Virus record (IMG/VR): IMGVR_UViG_3300017917_001996
Location: 1-64,000 of that record
Length of the DNA: 64,000 nucleotides
Strand: one strand, 5' to 3'
In this document: piece by piece, positions 4,788 to 61,389 of the stretch
Layout of the letters: each line of letters opens with the position of its first letter
Position numbering within the stretch: position 1 is the stretch's first letter
Notes under the pieces: model-generated
The model's input: only the letters and a program-made list of their open reading frames with translations
Told to the model about the DNA's origin: nothing
Databases searched by the model: none
Program-made: the position numbers and the translations under genes

Positions 4788-4878
4788 CTTCCTTCTATTA
4801 CTACGACTATTATAAATAAAAGACCCGATTGATATCAAATTAAACAGTAGTACTTTTAACACTGGACTTACATCTCTT

Positions 4879-6537: not shown

Positions 6538-7083
6538 ATGAAAACAATCGGCGATAAAATTACAAGTTTTGCAGTTACTGGCGTCAAGCCTGGCGCACTT
6601 TCTCCAGAGGGTGCGTTCGAAACTATTACTGACAAAAGCTTCGAAGGAAAATGGAAAGTTATTGTCTACTATCCTAAGGACTTCACTTTCGTATGTCCTA
6701 CTGAGATTGTTGCTTATGACAAGCTCAATGGTGACTTTGCTGACCGTGATGCAGTTCTATTGATCGGCAGCACAGACAATGAGTTCTGCAAGCTGGCATG
6801 GCGTAACGCACACGAAGATCTAAAGAAGACAAATTCTTGGAGCTTCGCTGATGTTGCTCGGGACGAAAACAGCCTAGCCGACCAACTTGGTATCTTCTAC
6901 GGCCCTGCTGGTGCTGCACTTCGCGCTACATTCATTGTTGACCCTGATAACGTTATTCAGCACGTTACAGTAAACAACTTAGACGTTGGTCGTAACCCAG
7001 ACGAAACATTGCGTGTTCTAGACGCACTGCAAACTGGCGAACTATGCCCATGCAGCCGTCCTGTCGGTGGTGAGACACTGTAA
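6538..7083 (+). CDS. ahpC: Peroxiredoxin AhpC
   Basis: YYPKDFTFVCPTE, GRNPDE, GELCPC. Confidence 0.95.
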   Translation: MKTIGDKITSFAVTGVKPGALSPEGAFETITDKSFEGKWKVIVYYPKDFTFVCPTEIVAYDKLNGDFADRDAVLLIGSTDNEFCKLAWRNAHEDLKKTNSWSFADVARDENSLADQLGIFYGPAGAALRATFIVDPDNVIQHVTVNNLDVGRNPDETLRVLDALQTGELCPCSRPVGGETL

Positions 7084-7430
7084 TGCACTATCACGCACAC
7101 ATCTACTGGCAAAATGAAGCCCAGAGGTTTGAAGCGTTACACCTAAGACAGCCCCTTCAAGAATTGGGCTGTCAATTGGGTAGCATACACGACGAACCGA
7201 TTGGTCCTCATCCGTCGCCTATGTATCAAGTAAACTACAACAGCAACATTGCTGACGAAGTTGAAGAATTGTTATATAAGGCTAAGTTGCATATCTTATT
7301 ACACGAAGATACCGGTAATGATGTGCGTAACCATACTGAAGGCGTAAGATGGATTGGAAGGCCTCTAACACTGAATATCGATTGGTTAAGGAATTATGCT
7401 AAAGGAGTAAAAAATGACACATTGGGTTGA
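7083..7430 (+). CDS. DOPA 4,5-dioxygenase family protein
   Basis: YHAHIY, IGPHP, LLHEDTG..NHT..WIGRPL.L motifs. Confidence 0.8.
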   Translation: MHYHAHIYWQNEAQRFEALHLRQPLQELGCQLGSIHDEPIGPHPSPMYQVNYNSNIADEVEELLYKAKLHILLHEDTGNDVRNHTEGVRWIGRPLTLNIDWLRNYAKGVKNDTLG

Positions 7431-7932
7431 TGCATTAAAAGAAAACAGCATACCTGATTATGCCAAGGATACCAAGCTAAACATGGACGCTGTAATCAAG
7501 CGTAGCTCGCTGCCTGCAGAAGAAGCAGAAGCCGTTGCACTAGCAGCCGCATTTGCCACAGGTAACAGCAAACTATGGACTTGGATGGAAAGTCAGATTG
7601 CTAACAAGACAGAGACACAGGCTGCACTAACAGCAGCAGCACTAATGGCACAAAACAACGTATGGTATCCTTACGTTGAAATGGCCGACGATGAGCAGCT
7701 CAAAGGTTTGCCTGCACAGTTGCGTATGAATGCCATTGCCACACACGGCGGCACAACCAAAGAGCGCTTTGAGGCATACAGTTTAGCCGCTAGCATTGTT
7801 GGTAAATGCCATTTCTGTGTAAAGGCACACTACGAAGGCCTAAAGAAAATGGGCTATACAGTTGAGCAATTACGTGACATTGGACGTATTTCCGCAGTGA
7901 TTACTAGTGTATCAAAAGTGGTAGCAAACTAA
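7414..7932 (+). CDS. ahpD: Alkyl hydroperoxide reductase AhpD
   Basis: PDYAKDTKLN, MAQNNVWY, LRMN, CHFCVKAH. Confidence 0.93.
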   Translation: MTHWVDALKENSIPDYAKDTKLNMDAVIKRSSLPAEEAEAVALAAAFATGNSKLWTWMESQIANKTETQAALTAAALMAQNNVWYPYVEMADDEQLKGLPAQLRMNAIATHGGTTKERFEAYSLAASIVGKCHFCVKAHYEGLKKMGYTVEQLRDIGRISAVITSVSKVVAN

Positions 7933-8348
7933 TGATTGAATGTATTGTATTAGGTGATTCTATTGCTGTAGGTACACACCTTCAACGCCATGAGTGTGTG
8001 TCCTATAGCAAAGGCGGTATTAATACTTGGCAATGGAACAAGATGTATAGCGACAAAGACCTAACTGCCGGTACAGTTATTATTAGTCTTGGCACCAACG
8101 ACCACAAAGGTGTAAAAACCGAAAAAGAGTTGTTAGCTATGCGATCTCGGGTCAAAGCAGCCCGAGTGTTTTGGATTATGCCTCCTTGTAATGATAAGTT
8201 TTGTAAGCAGGACGTCAATGACATTGTCAAGATGATTGCCGAAGCAAACGGAGATATAATTATCGGAACCAATCGTGTGCAAGCAGATGCTATTCACCCA
8301 AGTTGGGCCGGGTATAGAGAATTAGCAACACAAACAAAAGCACCGTAA
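7932..8348 (+). CDS. SGNH/GDSL hydrolase
   Basis: GDSIAVG, SLGTND, DAIHPSWAGY. Confidence 0.85.
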   Translation: MIECIVLGDSIAVGTHLQRHECVSYSKGGINTWQWNKMYSDKDLTAGTVIISLGTNDHKGVKTEKELLAMRSRVKAARVFWIMPPCNDKFCKQDVNDIVKMIAEANGDIIIGTNRVQADAIHPSWAGYRELATQTKAP

Positions 8349-8359
8349 GGTGCTTTTTT
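8336..8359 (+). terminator. Intrinsic terminator
   Basis: AAAAGCACC-GTAA-GGTGCTTTTTT. Confidence 0.9.
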
Positions 8360-8455: not shown

Positions 8456-8929
8456 GTGAAGAAAATAGTTACGATTTTGCTTTTTGTGCCCGTGCTAGCG
8501 CAAGCTGAACTAGTTCAACAATTCAAAAATCCTGCTTTTAGCGGCATTGGTTGGTCAAGCCATGCACTAACGGTAGACAGTATCGAAAAAAGTCGTAGAG
8601 ACACTATAGAAGCAGACAAAAAAGCCGCTATTGCCAAAGCCGAAGCAGATTTATTAAATACGCCGTTAAATAGGTTCATGAGCCTATTCCAGAGTCAAGT
8701 TTATGCACAACTTGCTACTCAATTAAGTAATAACTTATTCCAAAACAAATGTGCAGCCGCAGATGGCGGTAGTATTCCTGGTTGTGTAAATCCAACTACA
8801 GGAACATTTAATTTGGATGGAAATACCGTCACTTGGACAAAAGCCAATGACAAAGTTACATTAACTGTAGTTGATGCTAAAGGGTCAGTGACTACAGTCG
8901 TGGTACCAATTGCAAGTTTTGGATTCTAA
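8456..8929 (+). CDS. csgF: Curli assembly protein CsgF
   Basis: Signal peptide then AELVQQFKNPAFSG (CsgF N-terminal motif); adjacent to csgG. Confidence 0.8.
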   Translation: MKKIVTILLFVPVLAQAELVQQFKNPAFSGIGWSSHALTVDSIEKSRRDTIEADKKAAIAKAEADLLNTPLNRFMSLFQSQVYAQLATQLSNNLFQNKCAAADGGSIPGCVNPTTGTFNLDGNTVTWTKANDKVTLTVVDAKGSVTTVVVPIASFGF

Positions 8930-8937
8930 GGAGTACT

Positions 8938-9807
8938 ATGAAAGCATTTAAATTAAGTATTGTATCCTTAGCCATGCTAGCATTGGTAGGGTGTTCTACA
9001 GTGCGTCCATTGGGCAGCACAGATATCAGTAAAGAAGCCAAAGTATCAGAAACTATTAACAAAACGTTTTCTGTAGTTCCTACGCCAGCTGGGCCTCCAG
9101 TTGTAGTAGCGGTCTATGGTTTTACTGATAAAACTGGACAACGTAAGCCTAGTAATACATTAAGTTTGTTTAGCACTGCGGTAACACAAGGCGCAGAAAG
9201 TTATTTGATTAAGAGCCTACAAGAAGTGGGCAACGGATCTTGGTTTACTGTTGTTGAGCGTGTAGGCTTAGATAACCTACTCAAAGAGCGTCAAATGATC
9301 AAACAAACTCGCGAGATCTATGACGGAGACAAGGCCAAAATATTGCCTCCGCTAACATTAGCTGGTGTTATACTAGAAGGTGCTATTGTTGATTATAACA
9401 GCAATACATTAACTGGCGGCACTGGTGCTCGTTGGTTAGGCATTGGTCCTTATACACAGTATACTCAAGATTTAGTTGTTATTAGTCTAAGATTAATTAG
9501 TGTACAGTCTGGTGAAGTACTAACTACTGTTACAGTTGAGAAAAACCTACTAAGCACCTCTGATGGTGTCACTGCATTGAAATTCTTCAATCAATCGACT
9601 CGTGCGTTTGAGTTTGACAGCAGTCAAACATATAACGAACCTGCTAACTATGCACTTCGATCAGCAGTTGAAACAGCAATTGTAGAATTGATACGCAAAG
9701 GTGAGCGTCAAGGGCTTTGGAAGTTCAAGGAGAAACCAAATGAGCTGGTACAAAAGAACACCCAAGTTGAAGGAGCCGCCCAAGCATCTCCCGCATCACA
9801 GAAATAG
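8938..9807 (+). CDS. csgG: Curli secretion channel CsgG (lipoprotein)
   Basis: Lipobox LVGC; VAVYGFTDKTGQRKP, FSTAVTQG, WFTVVERVGLDNLLKERQMI, GGTGARWLGIG. Confidence 0.95.
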   Translation: MKAFKLSIVSLAMLALVGCSTVRPLGSTDISKEAKVSETINKTFSVVPTPAGPPVVVAVYGFTDKTGQRKPSNTLSLFSTAVTQGAESYLIKSLQEVGNGSWFTVVERVGLDNLLKERQMIKQTREIYDGDKAKILPPLTLAGVILEGAIVDYNSNTLTGGTGARWLGIGPYTQYTQDLVVISLRLISVQSGEVLTTVTVEKNLLSTSDGVTALKFFNQSTRAFEFDSSQTYNEPANYALRSAVETAIVELIRKGERQGLWKFKEKPNELVQKNTQVEGAAQASPASQK

Positions 9808-9898
9808 TCCAATAGCAGAAAAAATTAAAGAGGAAACACAAAATAAAGTAAGAGCATCAAGTAATAGCTCGGGCCCTAAAAAGAAACCTAAGGGGTAA
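9740..9898 (+). CDS. Small basic protein overlapping the csgG 3' end
   Basis: AAGGAG RBS before ATG 9740; fills the gap to 9904. Confidence 0.5.
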   Translation: MSWYKRTPKLKEPPKHLPHHRNSPIAEKIKEETQNKVRASSNSSGPKKKPKG

Positions 9899-9903
9899 AG
9901 AAA

Positions 9904-10716
9904 ATGAAAAAGACAATTTTAGCATTAATGTTAGGAGCAGTATTTCCAGCATTTGCACAAACTGCGGTGCAGTCACCTGCTAACCCTACCATTCCAACTA
10001 TGGTAACAGTAAGTCCAAATGCAACCGCAGCCTTGGCAAATACTACAACTAACCGTATTTTTATCGACCAAAGCGGCGATAATCCTAATGTCAATATGAC
10101 GCAAGACGGTAGCGGTAACAAGGCAGGCAGTGCTGCCCGCCCAATTTATCTACGTGGTATCAACCAAACAGTTGTTACACGTCAAATTGGCGTAACCAAT
10201 GAAATTAATTTAGAAGTAGTTAACCCAACAGTAGCCGATACTACACCAAATGTAGTAACTGGTGCTACTGTTACTATTCAACAAATCGGCGACAGTAACA
10301 AAGTTGACGCAGCCTGCGGTTATGGCACATTAAGCAATGGTACCACAAGCATTGCTGGGGGAACCGGTTGTAAAGCCTTGGATGTTAACTGGAAATTTAC
10401 CGGCGATAGCAATGAAATTCAATTCCGTGGAAACGGAACAGATATCAAGAGTGCAATCGATGTTCAAGGTGATACCAATAAGTTCTACATTGATGTAATG
10501 GGTGACAAGCACACACAAACCATCAAGGTAGTTGGCGACACTAACACCTTCCATATTAACCAAGCAAGCACTGGTTCTAGTGGTAGTAGCATTTGGGTCG
10601 ATCTTGCTGGCAACAGCAACAACTTGAATATTAGCCAAATTGGTACAGTTGATAATGTGCTAAACATTAAGAGTGTATCTAACAGCGGTACGTTTAATAT
10701 TACACAGAAAAACTAA
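9904..10716 (+). CDS. Curlin-repeat (CsgA/CsgB-like) secreted protein
   Basis: Signal peptide; repeated xIxQxGxxN units (IDQSGDN, TQDGSGN, RQIGVTN, QQIGDSN, SQIGTVDN). Confidence 0.8.
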   Translation: MKKTILALMLGAVFPAFAQTAVQSPANPTIPTMVTVSPNATAALANTTTNRIFIDQSGDNPNVNMTQDGSGNKAGSAARPIYLRGINQTVVTRQIGVTNEINLEVVNPTVADTTPNVVTGATVTIQQIGDSNKVDAACGYGTLSNGTTSIAGGTGCKALDVNWKFTGDSNEIQFRGNGTDIKSAIDVQGDTNKFYIDVMGDKHTQTIKVVGDTNTFHINQASTGSSGSSIWVDLAGNSNNLNISQIGTVDNVLNIKSVSNSGTFNITQKN

Positions 10717-10727
10717 GAGGGTATACC

Positions 10728-11831
10728 ATGAGGTTACCCCTCTTAGTCGCTGGACTATTCCTTTCAATATCGGCGTGGGCTGGAATAGGCTCTGTTACCG
10801 ATTTAACTGGTGCCGCTCAAATTAAGCGCGGTAAGGAAACTATTACGGTTTCAAAGGGCACCGCTATTGAAATGAATGACAAAGTTGAGACTAAAAACGG
10901 TAAATTAACTATCGTTTTTAAAGACGAAACAAATGTCAAGGTCAGCGAACATAGCAGTTTAGTGATTGACGATTTTGTCTACGATCCTAAAAGCGGCAAA
11001 GGTTCTTTAGCAATGAAAGCAGCCGGCGGTGCTGTGCGTTATACATCTGGCGCACTGGCCAAAGACCCTAAGCAAGTTAAAATAAACACACCTACTGCGG
11101 CTATTGCTGTGCGCGGCACAGATTTTGTTATGGCCGTTAACGAAGTAGGATCTAGCGTCATAGTACTGATGCCCACTTGCGATTGGGAAACTAGTTCGGT
11201 CAAGGGTGTTACCTGCGGTAGCAGTGGACGCATTGATGTTGAAAGTGGAACAAAAACTATTACATTAGATAAGGCATACGAAGCCACGGTAGTTGAAACA
11301 CTCGGAGCTCCACCGAGTCCTCCAATGATTGTTAGTATGAGTCAAGGTAATATAGGAACAAACTTATTAGTCAGCGAACCAAAAACTGCCAGTGGACGAT
11401 CAGTGGTTGCTGCTGCTAGGGCTGCAATGGATAAAACTGACGATAGTAAAAAAGATGATGCAGCCAAAGAAGAACAAAAGGTTGCTAGTAAAAGCACTGA
11501 TGAATCCAACAAACGATCTGCAGGCAGTGAAGACACATCTACAGTTAAAGTTGTTGTTGATACCACAAAGTTAGGTATAGATGTTGGCGATAGTACCAAA
11601 GAAAACCCATATGTACATAAGATATGGAAGGACAAAAGTGAGACGCAACAAATCGGCTGGCAATACGAAAGTTTGAGTCAGAACGGGAACAATTATACAA
11701 ACATTACTCTGCCTTTAGACACTAAGGTTTTGGTTATTGTAACGCAAGACAGAATTACAGATGCTTATAACTTTAACACGCAGAGCACTAAATCCTACGG
11801 ACAAATTGTTATTAATCAAACATACAGATGA
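10728..11831 (+). CDS. FecR-domain periplasmic protein
   Basis: Signal peptide; IEMNDKVET, VKINTPTAAIAVRGTDF. Confidence 0.85.
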   Translation: MRLPLLVAGLFLSISAWAGIGSVTDLTGAAQIKRGKETITVSKGTAIEMNDKVETKNGKLTIVFKDETNVKVSEHSSLVIDDFVYDPKSGKGSLAMKAAGGAVRYTSGALAKDPKQVKINTPTAAIAVRGTDFVMAVNEVGSSVIVLMPTCDWETSSVKGVTCGSSGRIDVESGTKTITLDKAYEATVVETLGAPPSPPMIVSMSQGNIGTNLLVSEPKTASGRSVVAAARAAMDKTDDSKKDDAAKEEQKVASKSTDESNKRSAGSEDTSTVKVVVDTTKLGIDVGDSTKENPYVHKIWKDKSETQQIGWQYESLSQNGNNYTNITLPLDTKVLVIVTQDRITDAYNFNTQSTKSYGQIVINQTYR

Positions 11832-13384
11832 TAAAAATATTATTTTCATTGTTATTATTGTTTAGCGGTATCGCCCATTCACAGAACATAGGGTTCGAAT
11901 CCGGTAATCTTTCAAACTGGACCACTTCGGGAACAGATGCAACAGTTAGCACCGGACTAAACAATGCCTCCTACGGTGGTGGTCTAACATGGACCATTAA
12001 GCCATATGGAACATACATGGCTCAGCTATATCCTAGCGGCAGCGTACAGTTCGACGGCGCTACCAGTAGCCTAGGTCTTACTAGCGCAGACAATACTGCC
12101 ATTAGAAATTTCATGACTGCCAACGCAGGTGGCGGCAGCCCTACTCCAACAAATGCAACCTGGATCAAAAGAACTGTAACGTTACAGGCAGGAACTACCT
12201 ACAGTTTTGCTTGGAACTATCTGTCTACAGATTATACACCATTTAACGACGGTTCAATGATCACCTTGGTACACACCACAGATGCCACCAAGATACCAAC
12301 ATTAAACAATGAGCAGAAAAGATATGCCTTACTAGGATTTACTAACCCTGGCACAGGAAACTATTCCACAGGCAGCTATGGTAGCACCGGTTGGCAGTTA
12401 GCAGTGTTTACTGTGCCAGTAACCGGCGACTACGTACTTGGATTTGCTACTTTTAACCTAGGCGATACTGCTCTAAGCCCTATGTTGTTCATTGATGAAC
12501 TACAAGGTGTTACAGAATTAAACGGACAGACTTTTGCTCCTATCGCTCCTAACGCAGGTAGTAGCGCACCAGTCACCGGAGGTGGCAGTAGCGAACCTAC
12601 GTACACATCTGACATAACTCCAGCACAAACATTGATTCTCAACAATGCAAGAACTAGACAAAATGCTATCACTTCAGGTAACAGAATTGACTTGTACAGC
12701 GATGGTTCTGGCAACAGCGTTACTATAGAGCAAGTAGGAAGTTATAACAGAATAAAAGGCCTTGGTACTGCACAAAATGCACACGTAGCAGGCTTTGGTA
12801 CCGCTGTAGACATCAAACAAGGCGAAGTTGGTGCTACCAGGAATCTAATAGAATTGTATGTACAAGGTAATGGCAACAACGTAACTTTAAGTCAAGCCCG
12901 AAATACTTCAACAGGTCTGGTCGATGGTGCAGAAAGTGGAGGGCATTATATGGGGTTGTCTCTAACTGGTGACATCAACTCAATAACCATTCGCCAGGGT
13001 AACGACGGTGGCAGTAACAGCGGTCACTTTACCTTACAAACTATCACAGGCAATTTTAACAACAGCACATTAAATCAAAGTAACAACGGCGAAAAACAAG
13101 CATTTATTAGTATAGACGGTAGCAGTAACAACAGCACCGTAATACAAAGTGGTACTGGTAATCATTATTTAGATTTAACCCTGACAGGAAACGGTAATAG
13201 TGCCAGTGTTACACAAAAAGATTCGGGTAGCCATAAGGCCACAATCAACTTATCTAATGTAGGTGGGCCAAGTTCGGCAACCGTAGTACAACAAGGTAGC
13301 ACCAATCAAGTCTACAATATTAGTCAACAATGTGCTACACTATCAGGGTGTTCTGTTAGTGTTACTCAAGGAACCGGGCCATGA
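11828..13384 (+). CDS. Secreted protein with an N-terminal beta-sandwich-like domain and C-terminal curlin repeats
   Basis: Signal peptide; GFESGNLSNW; many QxGxxN/H repeats in the C-terminal half. Confidence 0.8.
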   Translation: MIKILFSLLLLFSGIAHSQNIGFESGNLSNWTTSGTDATVSTGLNNASYGGGLTWTIKPYGTYMAQLYPSGSVQFDGATSSLGLTSADNTAIRNFMTANAGGGSPTPTNATWIKRTVTLQAGTTYSFAWNYLSTDYTPFNDGSMITLVHTTDATKIPTLNNEQKRYALLGFTNPGTGNYSTGSYGSTGWQLAVFTVPVTGDYVLGFATFNLGDTALSPMLFIDELQGVTELNGQTFAPIAPNAGSSAPVTGGGSSEPTYTSDITPAQTLILNNARTRQNAITSGNRIDLYSDGSGNSVTIEQVGSYNRIKGLGTAQNAHVAGFGTAVDIKQGEVGATRNLIELYVQGNGNNVTLSQARNTSTGLVDGAESGGHYMGLSLTGDINSITIRQGNDGGSNSGHFTLQTITGNFNNSTLNQSNNGEKQAFISIDGSSNNSTVIQSGTGNHYLDLTLTGNGNSASVTQKDSGSHKATINLSNVGGPSSATVVQQGSTNQVYNISQQCATLSGCSVSVTQGTGP

Positions 13385-13605
13385 TTGACTGGTCATTGTC
13401 TGCAGATTTGCAAACAAAATACAATGACATTCTAGAACGAAATAGAAAACTCCAACTTGAGTTGGGCATAGTTCCTAGAACATTAGAACAACGTGCTCAA
13501 GATTACGAAAAGAAAAAACTAGAACGAGAACAGGCTGCACAGGAGTTAGCTAGATTAAAAGCACTAACTGCCAATAGAAGACCACCGCCACGCTGGAAAG
13601 TGTAA
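13381..13605 (+). CDS. Hypothetical coiled-coil protein
   Basis: ORF overlaps the upstream stop (ATGA). Confidence 0.55.
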   Translation: MIDWSLSADLQTKYNDILERNRKLQLELGIVPRTLEQRAQDYEKKKLEREQAAQELARLKALTANRRPPPRWKV

Positions 13606-13627
13606 ATACTATTTTAAGGAGAACACC

Positions 13628-13918
13628 ATGCGCCAATTACTTTTAGGTGTTCTACTATTACCCGCTATCGCATTTGCTGAGCCTGTAACCGTAGAAAAAC
13701 CTGTAGTCTGCGAAAAAACAAAAATTCTAATAGAAGTGTTATCTGGTAGTGATTATAAAGAAGTACCGGTCTGGACAGGTCGCGACGACACCAGCAGGTA
13801 CAGCATCTTTGCCAATGAAAAGACCGGGTCCTGGACCATTATACAATTTAATGCAAATATTGCTTGCGTTTTAGGATCAGGTGAAGGACACAACTTCGTA
13901 AAGAAAACCAGAGTTTAA
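13628..13918 (+). CDS. Small secreted protein with two Cys
   Basis: AAGGAG RBS, signal peptide. Confidence 0.7.
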   Translation: MRQLLLGVLLLPAIAFAEPVTVEKPVVCEKTKILIEVLSGSDYKEVPVWTGRDDTSRYSIFANEKTGSWTIIQFNANIACVLGSGEGHNFVKKTRV

Positions 13919-13946
13919 GCAGTTTTTCATAGCTAAATATTAGACT

Positions 13947-16007
13947 ATGAAAAAAATCTTGCTAAATCCGTGGACAGCATTAGTTACCCTAATTGTTGTT
14001 GCACTAATTCGTTTCTTTGATCCTGCATTTGTTGAATCGGTAAGACTACGTTATTTTGACCAGCTCGTTGTAGGACAACCTGCTACGGAAATTCCTGTAG
14101 ACGTCGTTAACATTGACGAAGCCACCTTAGACAAATACGGACAGTTTCCTTTTCCTCGGGACATATACGCAAAAATAATACAGGATTTATACAAACGCAA
14201 TGCTGGCTTGGTTGTGTTTAACGTAATGATGCCTGAAGCAGATCGTTTTAAACAAGATCCTGTACTGGCACAAACACTAAATCAATATCCAGTTGTTTTA
14301 CCTAAGTTAGCACATACCAAGCAAAAGAATAAAGACCTAGGTAGTGCAGTACAATTATTAGGACAAGATCCCAGTGGGCGCATAGTAGAGTACCCTGGGC
14401 TAATCAACAACGTTCCTGCACTCGAAGAGATTGCTGCCGGAGTCGGTATCGTAAACACATTCCCAGAAATCGACGGCGTTCTACGTCGTATGCCATTAGT
14501 TGTTATGACCGGTAACGGTAATGTACATCCTGCTATCGCCCTTGAAGCATTGCGAGTGGCAGCAGGTGATGATAAGGTGCAGGTTAAGATCGGGGATGTT
14601 GGTGTCGAAGCTTTACGTGTTCCAAAATTTGGACGCCTTGACACAGATAACCTAAGTCGCATCTGGATTGATTGGAGTAAAAAGCCTGCTGAATACAGTC
14701 TAATGAATTTACCTGCAAGTTTTGATAACAAGATTGTTATTGTTGGACTAAGCGCACAAGGACTAGTAAATCCGATTGCTACTGCTCGCGGCGAAGTTTG
14801 GCCTCATAACATGCAAGCCAGCGTTATGGGTACACTGTTAACCAACACCAACATACAAAGACCAGGTTATGCCGACAACTTAGAACTAGCGTCAATTGTA
14901 ATTGCTGGTATTATTTTAATCTTTTTAATGAGGTGGACTTATGTTGGTATCGCTGCCACTGTGGTTACGATTGGTGGTGTTATTGCTGGTAGCATGTATG
15001 CTTACAGTAATTACTTATTCTTATTCGATAGCACTGCCTTTGCAGTTGGCGTGGGCCTGGTCGCTCTGCACGCCTACATGGTAAAGTTTGTTAGTGAGTT
15101 CTTACAGAAGCAACAGATTAGAAAACAATTCCAAAGCTATCTAAGTCCTGACTTGGTTGCTAAACTAATCAAAGATCCTAGCCTATTAAAACTAGGCGGC
15201 GAAGAAAAAGAATTAAGTATCATGTTCACAGACGTTCGTGGCTTTACCAGCATCAGCGAACACTACGGTAAAGACGTACAGGGTCTAACAAGCATCATGA
15301 ACAGATACATGACTGCTATGACTCGTACCATTTTAGAAACAGGCGGTACACTAGACAAGTATATCGGTGATGCACAGATGGCTTTCTGGAACGCACCATT
15401 GGATGAAACAAAGCACTGTAAAGATGCTGTTGAAGCAGCATTACAAATGTTAGGAAGTTTAGATGGATTTAATAAGAGCATTAGTGATGAAGGTGTTCCT
15501 CCCTTTGGGATGGGCATTGGTATTAATACCGGCGTTGTTGTTGTTGGGAATATGGGCAGCGAGCAACGTTTTGATTATACTTGCCTCGGCGATGCTGTCA
15601 ATCTCGCTTCGAGGCTTGAAGGCCAAAGCAAGAACTATGGCGTACTCATTGTCTTGGGACCGATCACAGCAGAAAGACTAGGCGACGAATACTTTACCCT
15701 CGAACTCGACTGTATTGCTGTTAAGGGTAAGAAAGATGGTGTAAACATTTTTACAGTATTCTACAACCCAGATAACGAAGTTGAAATGGTTAAATGGAAG
15801 ACTGCCAGAGAATTACACGACTTAATGTTAGCGCACTATCGCCGTCAAGAATGGGATAAAGCCGTTGCTCTGTGCAATGAGTTAAAAGGTGAATTCAATG
15901 GTGGCATGGACCACTATTACGAGCTATGGCTAGAAAGAATCGAGGGGATGCAAAATGCAGGTTTACCGGCTGATTGGGATGGAATTTTTAGGGCGCAATC
16001 GAAGTAA
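13947..16007 (+). CDS. CHASE2-domain class III adenylate cyclase
   Basis: CHASE2 (VNIDEATLDKYGQFPFPR, DGVLRRMPL), 3 TM helices, FTDVRGFT, DKYIGDA, DYTCLGDAVNLASRLEG; the K and D/T residues fit ATP specificity. Confidence 0.93.
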   Translation: MKKILLNPWTALVTLIVVALIRFFDPAFVESVRLRYFDQLVVGQPATEIPVDVVNIDEATLDKYGQFPFPRDIYAKIIQDLYKRNAGLVVFNVMMPEADRFKQDPVLAQTLNQYPVVLPKLAHTKQKNKDLGSAVQLLGQDPSGRIVEYPGLINNVPALEEIAAGVGIVNTFPEIDGVLRRMPLVVMTGNGNVHPAIALEALRVAAGDDKVQVKIGDVGVEALRVPKFGRLDTDNLSRIWIDWSKKPAEYSLMNLPASFDNKIVIVGLSAQGLVNPIATARGEVWPHNMQASVMGTLLTNTNIQRPGYADNLELASIVIAGIILIFLMRWTYVGIAATVVTIGGVIAGSMYAYSNYLFLFDSTAFAVGVGLVALHAYMVKFVSEFLQKQQIRKQFQSYLSPDLVAKLIKDPSLLKLGGEEKELSIMFTDVRGFTSISEHYGKDVQGLTSIMNRYMTAMTRTILETGGTLDKYIGDAQMAFWNAPLDETKHCKDAVEAALQMLGSLDGFNKSISDEGVPPFGMGIGINTGVVVVGNMGSEQRFDYTCLGDAVNLASRLEGQSKNYGVLIVLGPITAERLGDEYFTLELDCIAVKGKKDGVNIFTVFYNPDNEVEMVKWKTARELHDLMLAHYRRQEWDKAVALCNELKGEFNGGMDHYYELWLERIEGMQNAGLPADWDGIFRAQSK

Positions 16008-16033: not shown

Positions 16034-16585
16034 ATGAAACATACTCACCACATTATACCGAGACATATGGGCGGATCTGACGACCCATCGAATTTAGTAG
16101 AATTAACCATCGAAGAACATGCAGAAGCACATCGTTTGCTCTATGAACAACATGGCCATTGGCAAGATAAAGTTGCTTGGCGCGGATTGTTAGGGCTAAT
16201 AGGACACGAAGATATTATGCGAGAAATGTATGATGCCAGAAAAGGCAAAGGCAATGTTATGTATAGAAAACCTTGTTTTTACAAAATGACAGATGAAGAA
16301 AAAGAACGCTGGAAAGACAATTTAAGCAAAGCCAAAAAAGGCAAAAAGAAACCGGATGGGTTTAAAGAAAAATTAAGTAAAAGAAATTCCGGAGAAGGTA
16401 ATCCTATGTACGGAAAAGAGCCCTGGAACAAAGGAAAACAAATTGGTCCACAATCTGCCGAATCAAGACGAAAAAAAGGAAAACCCCTGATTTACAAAGG
16501 CATTGAGTACAATAGTATCAACGAAGCAGAAAAATTAACAGGCATTAGTGCTTATAAAATAACCAAAGACTGCAAATTTATTTAA
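16034..16585 (+). mobile_element. HNH homing endonuclease with NUMOD3-like repeats
   Basis: HHIIPRHMGGSDDPSNLVELTIEEHAEAH; GEGNPMYGK; CTAAATA promoter at 16022. Confidence 0.85.
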
Positions 16586-16857
16586 TGAAATACTTATTAC
16601 TAATTCCAACTATTCTCCTAGTAGGGTGCGCTTCGTCAAGTAAAATTGAAATACTTGAACACGAAAACAGGATCCTTAAAGAACAACTAGAGCAGCAGCA
16701 ACAAAAACGCATCTACCATTACATAGAAAAAATTGAAAAGATTCCAGAAAAACCATTCAAGGTTTGCCCGGAACAACCCAAGGACGATGATTATCCTTGT
16801 ATTAAAATGGGCCCGACTAAAACATTGGGCGTACAAGGTTTGCTTATTTTACGTTAA
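16585..16857 (+). CDS. Small lipoprotein
   Basis: Lipobox LVGC. Confidence 0.6.
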   Translation: MKYLLLIPTILLVGCASSSKIEILEHENRILKEQLEQQQQKRIYHYIEKIEKIPEKPFKVCPEQPKDDDYPCIKMGPTKTLGVQGLLILR

Positions 16858-16978: not shown

Positions 16979-17356
16979 ATGGTTGAAACCTTAATTTTAT
17001 TTTTTGTTTTACAGGTCAAGCACTATGTGGCTGATTTTGTAATTCAAACATACGCTCAGACAGTTCGTAAAGGAATTTATAGAGATCCTGTAGGCATAAG
17101 CCACAGTGCAGATCATGTTATAGGCAGCTTGGTTGCACTGTTGATTGCCAGCTTCTTTGTGCCAATGTCTATGCCATTTATAATTCTACTGTGTTTTATA
17201 GAAGGCATCTTACACTACCACATTGATTGGACCAAAGTACATTTTGGTTGTAAGGATATAACAAAACCTTTGTTCTGGAACCAATTTGGTATTGACCAAC
17301 TGGCGCACCAGTTTACTTATTTAGGTATGGTTCTGTTACTATTGACGTATCGTTAA
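16979..17356 (+). CDS. DUF3307-like membrane protein
   Basis: KHYVADF, HYHIDWTK, GIDQLAH. Confidence 0.75.
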   Translation: MVETLILFFVLQVKHYVADFVIQTYAQTVRKGIYRDPVGISHSADHVIGSLVALLIASFFVPMSMPFIILLCFIEGILHYHIDWTKVHFGCKDITKPLFWNQFGIDQLAHQFTYLGMVLLLLTYR

Positions 17357-17754
17357 TCGTCGCCGGAAGCGTCTTTAATTTCCTGAGCTGTAGCTTTACG
17401 TTTACCAATTGGTTGCTCTGCTTTTGCCGCTTCGGCTTTCTTAGCTTCTTCTTCACGTCGCTTCTTATAAGGATCAACGTTAATATCAGCTTCAGCAATC
17501 ATGCGTTCCTTTTCAATTGTTTTGCCACGCAATTGCAAAACAACTTCGACCTTTTGATTCAGCCTGATAAGATCATTGTCAAGCATACGAATACGATCAA
17601 TAAGAGCGATAAGAGTTCCATTGGCTTGTCCTATAACAGGTTTGATTTCGGTAGTGACCCAAGTCCAGACATAGTAGATAAAGCCCCCCATTCCTGCGGC
17701 AGCTATAATAGGGAAACCATATTTTGCTATTAGATCTGGTAAGTTACTTTCCAT
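17353..17754 (-). CDS. Single-TM coiled-coil protein (YvrJ-like GFPI motif)
   Basis: KYGFPIIAA TM, then LIDRIRMLDNDLIRL; paralogous to 18298-18579. Confidence 0.7.
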   Translation of the reverse strand: MESNLPDLIAKYGFPIIAAAGMGGFIYYVWTWVTTEIKPVIGQANGTLIALIDRIRMLDNDLIRLNQKVEVVLQLRGKTIEKERMIAEADINVDPYKKRREEEAKKAEAAKAEQPIGKRKATAQEIKDASGDD

Positions 17755-18259
17755 TTAAATTCCTCTTACATTTTTCAAAATGATATCTTGTCATATTTGC
17801 GCCTTTGCCTGTAACCCCGCAATGCGGGCAACTTCTATTAGGCTGTCTTGCTTGAGCATCTTTTAGTTTTTGTTTCCACTCAGAAGAAAACGGTTCTCTA
17901 ACCTTTCCTTTGTGAGCTTCGGATATTTTTCTTTTATGTTCTTCACTTTTGCTTTTACCAGCAAGGGCAGCAGCATTTTTATTTCCCTTTAACCAAGGTT
18001 TAGATTTTCCTTTATGAGCTTCGGATATTTTTCTTTTATGCTCTTCGCTTTTCGGTTGGGTTAGAATATCTTTTATTATTTCTGCACCAGTTATCATTTT
18101 TGCCAGGCCCATCCAAGCTCTTTTATCTTCAATTCGACCAAATTGTTCATACAACAGTCGATGAGCCTCTGCGTGTTCCTCAACAGTTAGTTCTATTAGA
18201 TTAGATGGGTCGTCGGTACCGCCCATATGCCTTGGTATGATGTGATGAGTATGTTTCAT
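17744..18259 (-). mobile_element. HNH homing endonuclease with NUMOD3 repeats
   Basis: HHIIPRHMGGTDDPSNL; KSEEHKRKISEAHKGK twice; probable ATG at 18259. Confidence 0.85.
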
Positions 18260-18297
18260 AGTAAATTTATTTATCTTATTTACTATGTTTGGCACCA

Positions 18298-18579
18298 TCA
18301 GTCTCTCCTTTGATCTGATTGCTCTGCTCGACTGATACGATAGTAATCCGGTTGCAATCCTAGTGCATGACTAATCTTAACATCAACCCGTTGTAGGTCG
18401 TTGGTCATAGTGTCTACACGAGCATCTAGGCCTTTGATGATTCCTGCCATGCCGTTAACGCTAGAAGTAACGCCAGCTAAAATAAACTTTAGTGTCAAAA
18501 ACACAAAGTACCCTGCCGCTAGTGCGGCTGCAATTGGGAAGCCTACATCGGCTACGAGTTTTAAGAAGTCCATAAACAT
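18298..18579 (-). CDS. Single-TM coiled-coil protein (YvrJ-like GFPI motif)
   Basis: DVGFPIAAA TM, then LDARVDTMTNDLQRV. Confidence 0.7.
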   Translation of the reverse strand: MFMDFLKLVADVGFPIAAALAAGYFVFLTLKFILAGVTSSVNGMAGIIKGLDARVDTMTNDLQRVDVKISHALGLQPDYYRISRAEQSDQRRD

Positions 18580-19093: not shown

Positions 19094-19101
19094 TATAAAT
19101 A
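19094..19101 (+). promoter_or_regulatory. T4-like late promoter TATAAATA (also 4811, 27915, 57853, 61319; CTAAATA variants at 13933, 16022, 31984, 53351, 59799, 61181)
   Basis: Exact T4 late consensus upstream of the structural operon; recurs before gene starts. Confidence 0.75.
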
Positions 19102-27505: not shown

Positions 27506-27919
27506 ATGTCATCAAAAAGTATCTATCTGGTTGCTACCTACTACATGAAACCCCGCAGTCGGGTAAACACACAACTTAAAGGTTGGATGAATGATCAAGA
27601 AAATATTGCCTATGACGAAAAAGTCGACATTACCCGAAATCTTAAAAAGTCAGATCTGAGCACAGCCAAGGTTATTTTAGACCTTAAAAAGAAATCTGTT
27701 GTGCGTAATGGATGGAACAACGATTTAGACTTTGATAAGATCTTTGAATACTTCCACAACGGGTATCCTCAATATACTAATTCTGTCATGGGCGAATTAG
27801 ATCCTGAGTACCTAAAGAAATTTGAAAAGCCGGCTACGGCTAATTCTGAGTTATCTATTTCTGCGCCCGACTCTGAAGTAGTCGAAATAGACACTAGCAC
27901 AGAAGCCAAGGTTCTATAA
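27506..27919 (+). CDS. Hypothetical protein
   Basis: Tightly packed ORF. Confidence 0.65.
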   Translation: MSSKSIYLVATYYMKPRSRVNTQLKGWMNDQENIAYDEKVDITRNLKKSDLSTAKVILDLKKKSVVRNGWNNDLDFDKIFEYFHNGYPQYTNSVMGELDPEYLKKFEKPATANSELSISAPDSEVVEIDTSTEAKVL

Positions 27920-27926
27920 ATACTGC

Positions 27927-57833: not shown

Positions 57834-57881
57834 TATAAAATCCTTCTTGTAATATAAATACATTATGCGGAGGATTTTATA
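57834..57881 (+). promoter_or_regulatory. RBS-sequestering hairpin with a late promoter TATAAATA at its loop
   Basis: TATAAAATCCT/AGGATTTTATA stem covers GGAGG and the A of ATG; TATAAATA at 57853-57860. Confidence 0.8.
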
Positions 57882-61239: not shown

Positions 61240-61323
61240 ATGACTGAAAAAAATCTAGCACAAGTCCTTCGCGAACGCATGAAGGCCAACGGCAAACGAT
61301 TCTGGGCCGGTGATAATGTATAA
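61240..61323 (+). pseudogene. N-terminal remnant of a displaced phage-type folE
   Basis: GGAG RBS; MTEKNLAQVLRERMKANGKRFWAGDNV*, truncated where TATAAATA begins. Confidence 0.6.
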
Positions 61324-61389
61324 ATACCATTGCTACACAAAGGTAGCAAACTTTTTAAAATTAACATCCGTGTAAGGAAGGATACAAAT

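What the first reader, a model, noticed from the sequence alone, without database searches (positions are those of the whole stretch)
8456..16007. Phage curli (type VIII secretion) operon with two curlin substrates, linked to FecR and a CHASE2 adenylate cyclase
Seen: csgF, csgG, a curlin, FecR, a domain-plus-curlin fusion, two small proteins and a membrane adenylate cyclase, all co-oriented. Known: curli genes have been reported in some T4-like aquatic phages with unclear function, and FecR plus CHASE2 cyclase is a bacterial trans-envelope signalling pairing. Inference: the module may be a surface-sensing circuit (amyloid fibre, CsgG pore, FecR, CHASE2, cAMP) rather than only a pore. It could aggregate infected cells, exclude superinfecting phage or time lysis.
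Basis: partly seen in the sequence, partly recalled or inferred. Interest (0 to 1): 0.7.

Follow-up and report, generated by a model that had tools for sequence, protein, structure and literature searches.

The report
Phage curli secretion plus cAMP-sensor module
A giant pond phage carries a complete set of genes for building amyloid "curli" fibres on its host's surface, fused to a membrane sensor that makes cyclic AMP. The same package is already published for marine SAR11 phages, so this copy is a new member rather than a new kind, and nobody yet knows what the package does.

Summary
Window 8456-16007 encodes CsgF, lipoprotein CsgG, a curlin, a secreted FecR-domain protein, a second curlin with a lectin/CBM-like head, two small non-conserved ORFs, and a CHASE2 class-III adenylate cyclase. 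All are co-oriented and tightly spaced, in a T4-like jumbo phage from a pond metagenome.

The linkage is not chance. In IMG/VR loci anchored on CsgG, FecR follows in 47/47 and the cyclase in 43/47. In loci anchored on the cyclase, CsgG is present in 34/36. The module-linked cyclases form one clade (SH-aLRT 100).

The same gene order occurs in Pelagibacter phage HTVC008M and Methylophilales phage Melnitz. The CsgF-CsgG-CsgA/B-FecR-CsgA/B-AC module was described in 2022 (PMC9599517), so this is a new member of a known kind.

New points here:
- The cyclase sensor is a CHASE2 domain.
- FecR is not an iron anti-sigma factor. It matches the FecR-domain partners that flank bacterial CHASE2 sensors.
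- Sampled bacterial curli loci lack FecR and the cyclase, so the phage module is a chimera.
- Two paralogous small membrane proteins outside the given coordinates (17353-17754, 18298-18579) belong to the module. They are probably the published "histidine kinases", but they have no kinase domain.

Function remains inferred.

The parts
8336..8357 (+). Terminator-like hairpin with a T-run, between the upstream GDSL-like gene and csgF. It probably marks the start of a separate transcription unit.
   Evidence: An RBS (GGAGGA) precedes the GTG start of csgF.
8456..8929 (+). CsgF, 157 aa, with a signal peptide. The mature N-terminus is ...QQFKNPAFSG.
   Evidence: Pfam PF10614 at 7.6e-11, covering profile positions 3-132 of 132. 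Hydrophobic N-terminus. Homologues found in 142 loci.
8938..9807 (+). CsgG outer-membrane lipoprotein, 289 aa. Lipobox LVGC, with Ser at position +2.
   Evidence: Pfam 1e-48. Aligns over its full length with E. coli CsgG (3x2r, 2.4e-42). The constriction loop aligns too: Phe56 is kept, Asn55 becomes Leu and Tyr51 becomes Ser.
9904..10716 (+). Curlin 1 (CsgA/B-like), 270 aa, with a signal peptide. Rich in N, T and G, with repeats of the form phi-x-phi-x-Q-x-G-x-x-N.
   Evidence: The phage-built HMM hits bacterial curlins next to csgFG. The Melnitz homologue is annotated as a curlin repeat protein.
10728..11831 (+). Secreted FecR-domain protein, 367 aa. It has a signal peptide, a FecR fold (aa 21-203), a disordered K/D/E-rich linker (239-275) and a small beta domain (286-364).
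   Evidence: Pfam 1e-9. AF2 model with pLDDT 78. VIA Z 15.1 to PupR 6ovk_R and Z 10.9 to 5ix9. Present in 47/47 CsgG-anchored loci.
11828..13384 (+). Curlin 2, 518 aa. It has a signal peptide, a CBM/lectin-like beta-sandwich head (aa ~28-235), a linker, a curlin beta-solenoid (285-515) and a C-terminal Cys-x6-Cys.
   Evidence: Pfam Curlin_rpt. AF2 model. Foldseek matches to CBM4/16/22/61 at probability 1.0, TM by target 0.4-0.59. The head domain differs between relatives.
13381..13605 (+). Small ORF of 74 aa, with coiled-coil character and no signal peptide. Not a conserved module member.
   Evidence: Homologues in only 3 loci. No family match.
13628..13918 (+). Small secreted ORF of 96 aa with two Cys. 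It is phage-only and variably placed, and is not core to the module.
13947..16007 (+). Receptor adenylate cyclase, 686 aa. Order of parts: TM1, periplasmic CHASE2 (aa ~25-310), three TM helices (308-383), a class III cyclase domain (421-597) and a conserved C-terminal tail.
   Evidence: Pfam and hydropathy. The best solved relatives are cyclases deposited as adenylate cyclases, Cya2, CyaB and CyaC. The metal-binding Asp residues, the substrate Lys (DKYIGD), Thr in place of Asp (DYTCLGD), and the Asn and Arg are invariant or nearly so in 12 homologues.
16979..17356 (+). DUF3307 membrane protein, 125 aa. It is a lineage-specific companion that sits just upstream of csgF in most close relatives, and is absent from Melnitz and HTVC008M.
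17353..17754 (-). X2, 133 aa. A small bitopic membrane protein with a GFPIIAA helix and the coiled-coil motif LIDRIRMLDNDLIRL. Conserved module member.
   Evidence: It lies directly upstream of csgF in Melnitz, HTVC008M and 37 IMG/VR loci.
18298..18579 (-). X1, 93 aa, a paralogue of X2. It is the best-conserved protein of the module. Its C-terminus ends in D-x-R-R-D.
   Evidence: Among 50,697 phage records it is found only in the six that carry the module.

Best explanation
This is a copy, in a freshwater jumbo phage, of the conserved viral curli (type VIII secretion) module. Its core is eight genes: X1, X2, csgF, csgG, curlin 1, FecR-domain protein, curlin 2 and a CHASE2 adenylate cyclase.

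Shown:
- The gene identities.
- The export signals.
- An intact catalytic residue set in the cyclase.
- Near-obligate linkage of the genes across more than 100 phage contigs and two isolated phages.
- A single clade of module-linked cyclases.
- Absence of this linkage from the sampled bacterial curli and CHASE2 loci.

Inferred mechanism:
1. In the infected cell, the Sec-exported lipoprotein CsgG, together with CsgF, forms an outer-membrane channel.
2. The two curlins pass through it and polymerise into a surface amyloid. Curlin 2 anchors a variable lectin-like head on the fibre.
3. This changes the cell surface, by adhesion or aggregation, or by masking receptors against other phages.
4. The secreted FecR-domain protein acts as the periplasmic partner of the CHASE2 domain, as FecR-domain proteins appear to do for bacterial CHASE2 sensors. 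The cyclase thereby converts an envelope or secretion state into cAMP.
5. The cAMP must act through host receptors, because the phage DNA held encodes none.

X1 and X2 are inner-membrane accessories of unknown role.
For: - Domain and structure identities.
- Signal peptides and TM topology.
- Linkage: FecR in 47/47 and the cyclase in 43/47 of CsgG-anchored loci; CsgG in 34/36 of cyclase-anchored loci. The misses lie 15-18 kb away on the same contigs.
- Same order in Melnitz and HTVC008M.
- The cyclases form one clade against 20 alphaproteobacterial chromosomal homologues, SH-aLRT 100.
- Bacterial FecR-CHASE2 adjacency: 7/20 cyclase loci and PMC5192318.
- Bacterial curli loci with curlins but no FecR or cyclase: 0/7.
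- X1 and X2 occur only with the module.
- Precedent for an outer-membrane beta-barrel feeding a CHASE2 cyclase, cAMP and then a CRP-type regulator: PMC13001267.
- Published module description and metatranscriptome expression of the marine versions: PMC9599517.
Against: - No direct evidence for fibre formation, for FecR-CHASE2 contact (one search gave no answer) or for cAMP output.
- CsgE and CsgC are absent, so gating and chaperoning would have to work differently.
- Two of the three constriction residues of CsgG differ from E. coli.
- When the cyclase is inverted or displaced, FecR stays with the curli block. The literature reports podoviruses with FecR but no cyclase (PMC9599517). FecR may therefore serve secretion rather than, or as well as, the cyclase.
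- Curlin 1 is only weakly recognised by curated models.
- Neither the host nor the timing of expression is known. No T4 late promoter motif lies near the module.
Confidence: 0.5

Rival explanations
1. The FecR-domain protein belongs to the secretion machine, not to the sensor. It would replace the missing periplasmic factor CsgE, or a nucleator or anchor, at the CsgG vestibule. The cyclase would then be a looser add-on that regulates or exploits host physiology separately.
For: FecR is always between the two curlin genes and stays with csgFG when the cyclase is inverted or lies 15-18 kb away. CsgE is absent. The first half of the FecR fold resembles the periplasmic retention/plug domain of LapA-type adhesins (5ix9, Z 10.9). 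The conserved C-terminal beta domain, which ends in a phi-x-phi-x-Q strand, was not aligned by most bacterial FecR hits. PMC9599517 reports podoviruses with FecR but without the cyclase.
Against: In sampled bacteria FecR-domain genes flank CHASE2 cyclases (7/20) and never curli loci (0/7). The cyclase is nearly always present in this lineage.
Confidence: 0.2
2. The CsgG(F) channel is used as a pore rather than for fibres. It would be a pinholin- or secretin-like lysis timer (the proposal for Melnitz) or an import channel, and the curlin-like genes would be irrelevant.
For: This was proposed in PMC9004378 and PMC7029224. The constriction residues differ from E. coli. No clumping was seen in Melnitz cultures (PMC9004378).
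Against: Two curlin-repeat proteins with signal peptides are conserved in the module across all lineages examined, including Melnitz and HTVC008M. CsgF, which is needed for surface nucleation rather than for the pore, is conserved in 46/47 loci. CsgG is a lipoprotein with an outer-membrane sorting signal, not an inner-membrane holin.
Confidence: 0.12
3. The cyclase is a counter-defence or signalling enzyme unrelated to curli. It might, for example, make a cyclic nucleotide that interferes with host Pycsar- or CBASS-type immunity, and sit next to the curli genes only by common descent.
For: The catalytic domain matches the Pycsar cyclase models of PADLOC (best 1.7e-26).
Against: That match reflects the shared class III fold. 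The substrate residues are Lys and Thr, the best solved relatives are cyclases deposited as adenylate cyclases, and the Cya2 sequence among them carries Glu where the phage has the substrate Lys. The enzyme carries a periplasmic CHASE2 sensor. Linkage survives transfer between unrelated phage lineages with different flanking genes (PMC9599517).
Confidence: 0.05

Closest known systems
Viral T8SS (curli) module of pelagiphages: HTVC023P-type podoviruses, pelagimyophages such as HTVC008M, and Methylophilales phage Melnitz (PMC9599517, PMC7029224, PMC9004378)
   Same: Same genes in the same order: two small genes, then csgF, csgG, curlin, FecR, curlin, adenylate cyclase. All six core proteins are homologous at 25-49% identity. 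The cyclases fall in one clade.
   Different: The host phage is a freshwater jumbo myovirus. Its DNA polymerase is nearest to Sinorhizobium phage Phosso and Agrobacterium phage Atu_ph07, not to Kyanoviridae. The X1/X2 pair has moved downstream onto the opposite strand. Curlin 2 carries a CBM-like head. There are extra small ORFs and HNH endonuclease insertions, and a DUF3307 companion gene.
Bacterial curli systems (E. coli csgBAC-csgDEFG; alphaproteobacterial csgF-csgG-curlin loci)
   Same: CsgG lipoprotein, CsgF and secreted curlin-repeat subunits. The nearest sampled bacterial CsgG proteins are 39-48% identical and have the same csgF-csgG-curlin order.
   Different: No CsgE, CsgC or CsgD here. 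FecR, the CHASE2 cyclase, X1 and X2 were absent from all 7 sampled bacterial loci.
Bacterial two-gene sensors: a periplasmic FecR-domain protein (COG4254) plus a CHASE2 sensor, for example the Burkholderia biofilm-switch operon and its P. aeruginosa PAO1 counterpart (PMC5192318)
   Same: A secreted FecR-domain protein encoded beside a membrane protein with a periplasmic CHASE2 domain.
   Different: In the published cases the output is a histidine kinase and the FecR protein often has a LysM domain. Here the output is an adenylate cyclase, and FecR has its own C-terminal beta domain and sits among the curli genes.
Sinorhizobium meliloti CHASE2 adenylate cyclases CyaD1/CyaD2/CyaK with the outer-membrane beta-barrel NsrA and the CRP-type regulator Clr (PMC13001267, PMC5498481)
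   Same: CHASE2 plus class III cyclase architecture. An extracellular protein cue is relayed through an outer-membrane beta-barrel to cAMP. Alphaproteobacterial homologues score E values down to 1e-83.
   Different: The outer-membrane partner here would be CsgG rather than NsrA. The phage DNA held encodes no Clr/CRP-like receptor. The relay itself is untested.

Membership tests
Type VIII secretion / curli system | CsgG outer-membrane lipoprotein channel | tested here: met
   Pfam 1e-48. Full-length alignment to E. coli CsgG structures at 2.4e-42, with lipobox.
Type VIII secretion / curli system | CsgF accessory or nucleation factor | tested here: met
   Pfam CsgF at 7.6e-11 over the whole profile, with a signal peptide. 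No hit to solved structures by sequence.
Type VIII secretion / curli system | Secreted subunit(s) built of curlin repeats | tested here: met
   Curlin 2 exceeds the Pfam cut-off. Curlin 1 reaches it only when its stretches are summed, and also has a weak CsgB match and profile hits to bacterial curlins. The model shows a strand-turn-strand solenoid.
Type VIII secretion / curli system | Periplasmic factors CsgE (gate/adaptor) and CsgC/H (chaperone) | tested here: not met
   No Pfam CsgE or CsgC match in the 250 kb held. The literature says these are also missing from the marine phage modules and many non-gamma bacteria (PMC9599517).
Type VIII secretion / curli system | Formation of extracellular amyloid fibres | not testable with these tools
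   Needs expression followed by Congo red or ThT staining and electron microscopy.
Viral curli-FecR-cyclase module (PMC9599517) | Order csgF-csgG-curlin-FecR-(curlin)-cyclase on a phage genome, preceded by one or two small genes | tested here: met
   In this lineage the small gene pair has been relocated.
Class III adenylate cyclase | Two metal-binding Asp, an adenine-specifying Lys, Asp or Thr at the second specificity position, and the transition-state Asn and Arg | tested here: met
   Motifs FTDVRGFT, DKYIGD and DYTCLGDAVNLASRLE. These residues are invariant or nearly invariant in 12 homologues. Alignment to Cya2, CyaB and CyaC. The residue roles come from established knowledge of the family. 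Enzyme activity was not tested.
CHASE2 sensor proteins | Periplasmic CHASE2 domain between TM1 and a cluster of three TM helices, upstream of an output domain | tested here: met
   Pfam CHASE2 at 3.8e-34, aa 14-322. Hydrophobic segments at 3-32 and 308-383.
FecR-type anti-sigma factor (cell-surface signalling) | N-terminal cytoplasmic anti-sigma domain plus a TM helix, with a partner ECF sigma factor and a TonB-dependent transducer | tested here: not met
   The protein starts with a cleavable-type signal peptide, followed directly by the FecR fold. No Sigma70_r2 or TonB Plug family is found in the genome held. Only the periplasmic FecR domain is shared (Z 15.1 to PupR).
Histidine kinase (label given in PMC9599517 to the small genes before csgF) | DHp domain with a conserved phospho-accepting His, plus a HATPase_c catalytic domain | tested here: not met
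   X1 and X2 are 93 and 133 aa with no Pfam kinase domain. The only His, in X1, is not conserved. That they are the published 'HK' genes is inferred from position, not checked against that paper's sequences.
Pycsar defence cyclase (PycC) | Cyclase paired with a cyclic-pyrimidine-binding effector in a host defence locus | tested here: not met
   Only the cyclase fold matches. No effector or cNMP-binding domain was found, and the gene is phage-encoded with a CHASE2 sensor.

The most novel reading that the evidence does not exclude
The eight genes form one self-contained trans-envelope device. The CsgG/CsgF pore and the growing, lectin-tipped fibre report contact or secretion state through the FecR-domain protein, and perhaps through the X1/X2 membrane pair, to the CHASE2 cyclase. 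A phage would thereby give its host a new surface sense with a cAMP output. The phage would use it to decide timing of lysis, superinfection exclusion or aggregation.
Probability: 0.15. Interest if true: 0.8.

Novelty: new member of a known kind. Interest (0 to 1): 0.45.

Why it matters
The package is very widespread. It was published for marine SAR11 and OM43 phages. Here, at least 598 IMG/VR stretches encode the cyclase, many of them on contigs of 230-380 kb, and X1 falls into 1,475 protein clusters in metagenomes. Yet nobody knows what it does.

It gives infected cells a surface structure, and possibly a signalling input, that at least some hosts lack entirely. This copy shows that the module is not a peculiarity of streamlined marine hosts.

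Three points sharpen the question for experiments:
- The sensor is a CHASE2 receptor with a FecR-domain partner, so iron regulation is not the likely reading.
- The fibre carries exchangeable lectin-like heads.
- Two unnamed membrane proteins are obligate companions of the module.

Tried and rejected
- **FecR-CHASE2 complex prediction.** FecR aa 19-367 was folded with CHASE2 aa 25-312. The score was 0.00 and the tool's verdict was "no answer", so this is no evidence either way.
- **DNA search against phage records.** Megablast of the region found nothing. Protein-level search was needed.
- **Expression.** Only DNA runs from one pond-metagenome study were listed, and of these only the probable source run holds the sequence. 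No RNA run was listed.
- **Promoter timing.** No T4 late motif (TATAAATA) lies near the module, and sigma-70-like matches are no more frequent than in shuffled sequence. Timing is undetermined.
- **Whole module in bacteria.** The scan of 185,579 species genomes with cyclase patterns gave 7 loci. Five of them carry other module genes alongside the cyclase, and two short contigs show only the cyclase. Of the two contigs whose flanks I annotated, both carry phage-type genes: integrase and AAA_24 on one, lysozyme on the other. They probably reflect phage or prophage DNA in MAGs. They do not show a cellular origin of the fusion.
- **cAMP receptor and Fec-type partners.** No cAMP receptor, ECF sigma factor, TonB-dependent transducer, CsgE or CsgC was found in the phage genome held. 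The record is estimated to be only 71% complete.
- **Small ORFs s74 and s96.** No family match. s96 has only chance-level similarity to T4 Spackle and Ivy lysozyme inhibitors (score 0.45-0.48). I reject them as core parts.
- **Contamination or assembly chimera.** Rejected. GC content is even, phage genes lie on both sides, and the module is conserved in isolated phages.
- **Rule noted.** I rebuilt it without them.

Full report
**What is there**

The window is the first 64 kb of a 250,289-bp IMG/VR virus record that CheckV rates 71% complete. It carries a T4-family DNA polymerase, tail-fibre genes and an ATP-dependent protease. Its polymerase is closest to Sinorhizobium phage Phosso (51%), Agrobacterium phage Atu_ph07 (46%) and 350-kb Rak2-like phages. 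The sequence is held almost completely by one pond-metagenome run.

Between 8456 and 16007, eight co-oriented ORFs are packed with spacings of -4 to 28 nt and one 96-nt gap. Pfam names five of them:

| Gene | E-value |
|---|---|
| CsgF | 7.6e-11 |
| CsgG | 1e-48 |
| FecR-domain protein | 1e-9 |
| Curlin-repeat protein | 8.4e-6 |
| CHASE2 (cyclase protein) | 3.8e-34 |
| Class III cyclase domain (same protein) | 6.1e-20 |

**The parts in detail**

- **CsgG** aligns end to end with the solved E. coli protein, including the lipobox and the constriction loop. In that loop Phe56 is kept, while Asn55 and Tyr51 are replaced.
- **CsgF** matches the whole Pfam profile and has a signal peptide.
- **ORF 9904-10716** is only weakly seen by curated curlin models. 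However, it has the N/T/G-rich phi-x-phi-x-Q-x-G-x-x-N repeats. A profile built from its phage homologues finds the curlin genes beside csgFG in Alphaproteobacteria.
- **The 518-aa protein** models as three parts: a beta-sandwich (aa 28-235), a disordered linker and a strand-turn-strand solenoid (aa 285-515). The beta-sandwich resembles carbohydrate-binding modules and lectins (Foldseek probability 1.0, TM by target 0.4-0.59). Relatives keep the curlin part but swap the head. Some have no head, one has an added discoidin-like insert, and one is 1,445 aa long.
- **The FecR protein** begins with a signal peptide, not an anti-sigma domain. Its model matches the periplasmic domain of PupR (Z 15.1) and, over its first half, the retention domain of a LapA-type adhesin (Z 10.9). 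It ends in a conserved small beta domain.
- **The cyclase** has one TM helix, a periplasmic CHASE2 domain, three TM helices and a catalytic domain. Its metal, substrate (Lys, Thr) and transition-state residues are conserved. Its nearest solved relatives are cyclases deposited as adenylate cyclases.

**Is the linkage real?**

Yes.

I compared all window proteins with the 160 fetched loci:

| Anchor gene | Loci with enough flank | csgF | Curlin | FecR | Cyclase | CsgG |
|---|---|---|---|---|---|---|
| CsgG | 47 | 46 | 44 | 47 | 43 | n/a |
| Cyclase | 36 | n/a | n/a | 34 | n/a | 34 |

- Three of the four CsgG-anchored loci without a cyclase, and both cyclase-anchored loci without CsgG, are contigs where the two genes lie 15-18 kb apart.
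- Among all 160 loci, the curli/FecR block is inverted relative to the cyclase in about 11 (5 of the 36 counted above). FecR stays with the curli genes in these.
- Identities fall to 25-40%, so this is conservation over a long time.

**It is already known**

Protein searches of 50,697 phage records found the cyclase and CsgG together only in Pelagibacter phage HTVC008M and the four Melnitz isolates. Their GenBank annotations read CsgF, CsgG, curlin, FecR (hypothetical in HTVC008M), curlin (hypothetical in HTVC008M) and adenylate cyclase, in the same order.

Two papers treated the cluster as an incomplete curli operon (PMC7029224, PMC9004378). A 2022 paper (PMC9599517) described the full module in podo- and myoviruses of SAR11. 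It includes FecR, a second CsgA/B, an adenylate cyclase and one or two preceding "histidine kinases". That paper showed the module's global distribution and transcription, and proposed superinfection defence, sibling capture or import as functions.

In my tree, all module-linked cyclases form one clade, separate from 20 chromosomal alphaproteobacterial CHASE2 cyclases (SH-aLRT 100). The clade holds 42 viral sequences, including Melnitz and HTVC008M, and 6 MAG contigs. The window is thus a new member of a known kind, in a different phage lineage and habitat.

**What this analysis adds**

1. **The sensor domain is CHASE2.** The 2022 paper does not mention it.
2. **FecR is not an iron regulator here.**
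   - It lacks the anti-sigma part, and the genome held has no ECF sigma factor or TonB-dependent transducer.
   - Secreted FecR-domain proteins are known neighbours of CHASE2 histidine kinases (PMC5192318).
   - 134 of 401 sampled alphaproteobacterial genomes have a CHASE2 cyclase. In 7 of the 20 best loci, a gene matching the phage FecR profile lies beside it, and none has csgG.
3. **The phage module looks like a fusion of two bacterial units.** The 7 sampled alphaproteobacterial loci with the closest CsgG have csgF, csgG and curlins, but no FecR, cyclase, X1 or X2. Of the seven hits in 185,579 species genomes, five carry other module genes alongside the cyclase, and the two contigs whose flanks I annotated carry phage-type genes.
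4. **Two more genes belong to the module but lie outside the given coordinates.** These are X2 (17353-17754, minus strand) and X1 (18298-18579, minus strand).
   - They are paralogous small membrane proteins with a coiled coil.
   - They sit directly before csgF in Melnitz, HTVC008M and 37 loci, and after the cyclase on the other strand in this lineage.
   - Among phage records, X1 occurs only where the module does.
   - X1 is the best-conserved module protein.
   - They have no kinase domain and no conserved histidine. If they are the published "HK" genes, that label is doubtful.

**How it most likely works**

Shown: the gene identities, export signals, an intact catalytic set, conserved linkage and a single origin.

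Inferred: the infected cell makes a CsgG/CsgF outer-membrane channel and secretes two curlins. These form a surface amyloid that carries a variable lectin-like head. The FecR-domain protein serves as the periplasmic partner of the CHASE2 cyclase, which turns an envelope or secretion state into cAMP. Host proteins would read the cAMP, because no cyclic-nucleotide-binding domain is encoded in the 250 kb held.

A precedent exists in S. meliloti. There, CHASE2 cyclases sense an external protein through the outer-membrane barrel NsrA and signal through cAMP and Clr (PMC13001267).

Points against, or still open:
- The FecR-CHASE2 complex prediction gave no answer.
- CsgE and CsgC are missing.
- FecR travels with the curli genes rather than with the cyclase, so it may serve secretion instead.
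- Expression timing could not be determined.

**Verdict**

The module is a conserved and intriguing phage device whose biological role is still unknown, but its existence and composition are published. I score interest at 0.45 and novelty as a new member of a known kind.

Noticed in passing
window 17353-17754 (-) and 18298-18579 (-): A paralogous pair of small bitopic membrane/coiled-coil proteins (X2, X1) co-occurs strictly with the curli-FecR-cyclase module. X1 is the most conserved protein of the module and has 1,475 unnamed protein clusters in metagenomes. Its function is unknown. The pair is probably what the literature labels 'histidine kinase', but it has no kinase features.
   Followed up: yes
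window 16034-16585 (+) and 17744-18298 (-): Two HNH/NUMOD3 homing-endonuclease genes sit inside the extended module. One follows the cyclase and one lies between X2 and X1. Related endonucleases appear at varying places in a few relatives.
   Followed up: partly
window 16585-16857 (+): A 90-aa ORF with a lipoprotein signal (LLVGC). No homologue was found in any of the 160 related loci.
   Followed up: partly
window 16979-17356 (+): A DUF3307 membrane protein lies immediately upstream of csgF in most close relatives (66 loci) but downstream of the cyclase here. It is absent from Melnitz and HTVC008M.
   Followed up: partly
window 6538-8348 (+): A run of redox and small-molecule genes sits just upstream of the module: an AhpC/TSA peroxiredoxin, a DOPA 4,5-dioxygenase family protein, a carboxymuconolactone-decarboxylase family protein and a truncated-looking GDSL-like lipase (below the Pfam cut-off). 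AhpC and CMD homologues also lie next to the module in L072.
   Followed up: no
window 10728-11831, residues 17-111 of the FecR protein model: The first half of the FecR fold superposes on the 76-residue 'cell surface anchoring' (retention) domain of the Marinomonas ice-binding adhesin, 5ix9 (Z 10.9, 25% identity). That domain is thought to plug a TolC-like outer-membrane pore from the periplasm.
   Followed up: partly
L003:13052-15145: In one relative, curlin 2 has an extra insert of about 150 aa between the head and the curlin repeats. By eye it resembles a discoidin/F5-F8 type C domain. In L066 the homologous gene is 1,445 aa. The head region appears to be a swap site.
   Followed up: no
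L162-L165 (GTDB MAG contigs): Contigs carrying the module cyclase (csgG seen on three of the four) are binned into Bacteroidota (three) and Verrucomicrobiota (one) MAGs. L162 and L163 share further genes with this phage. They are probably phage DNA in MAG bins, and give only a weak hint about hosts.
   Followed up: partly
window 19094-19101, 27915-27922, 57853-57860, 61319-61326, 4811-4818: The T4 late-promoter motif TATAAATA occurs five times, no more than chance predicts. One copy lies 24 nt before the Ig-domain gene that starts at 19125, just upstream of the tail-fibre genes.
   Followed up: no
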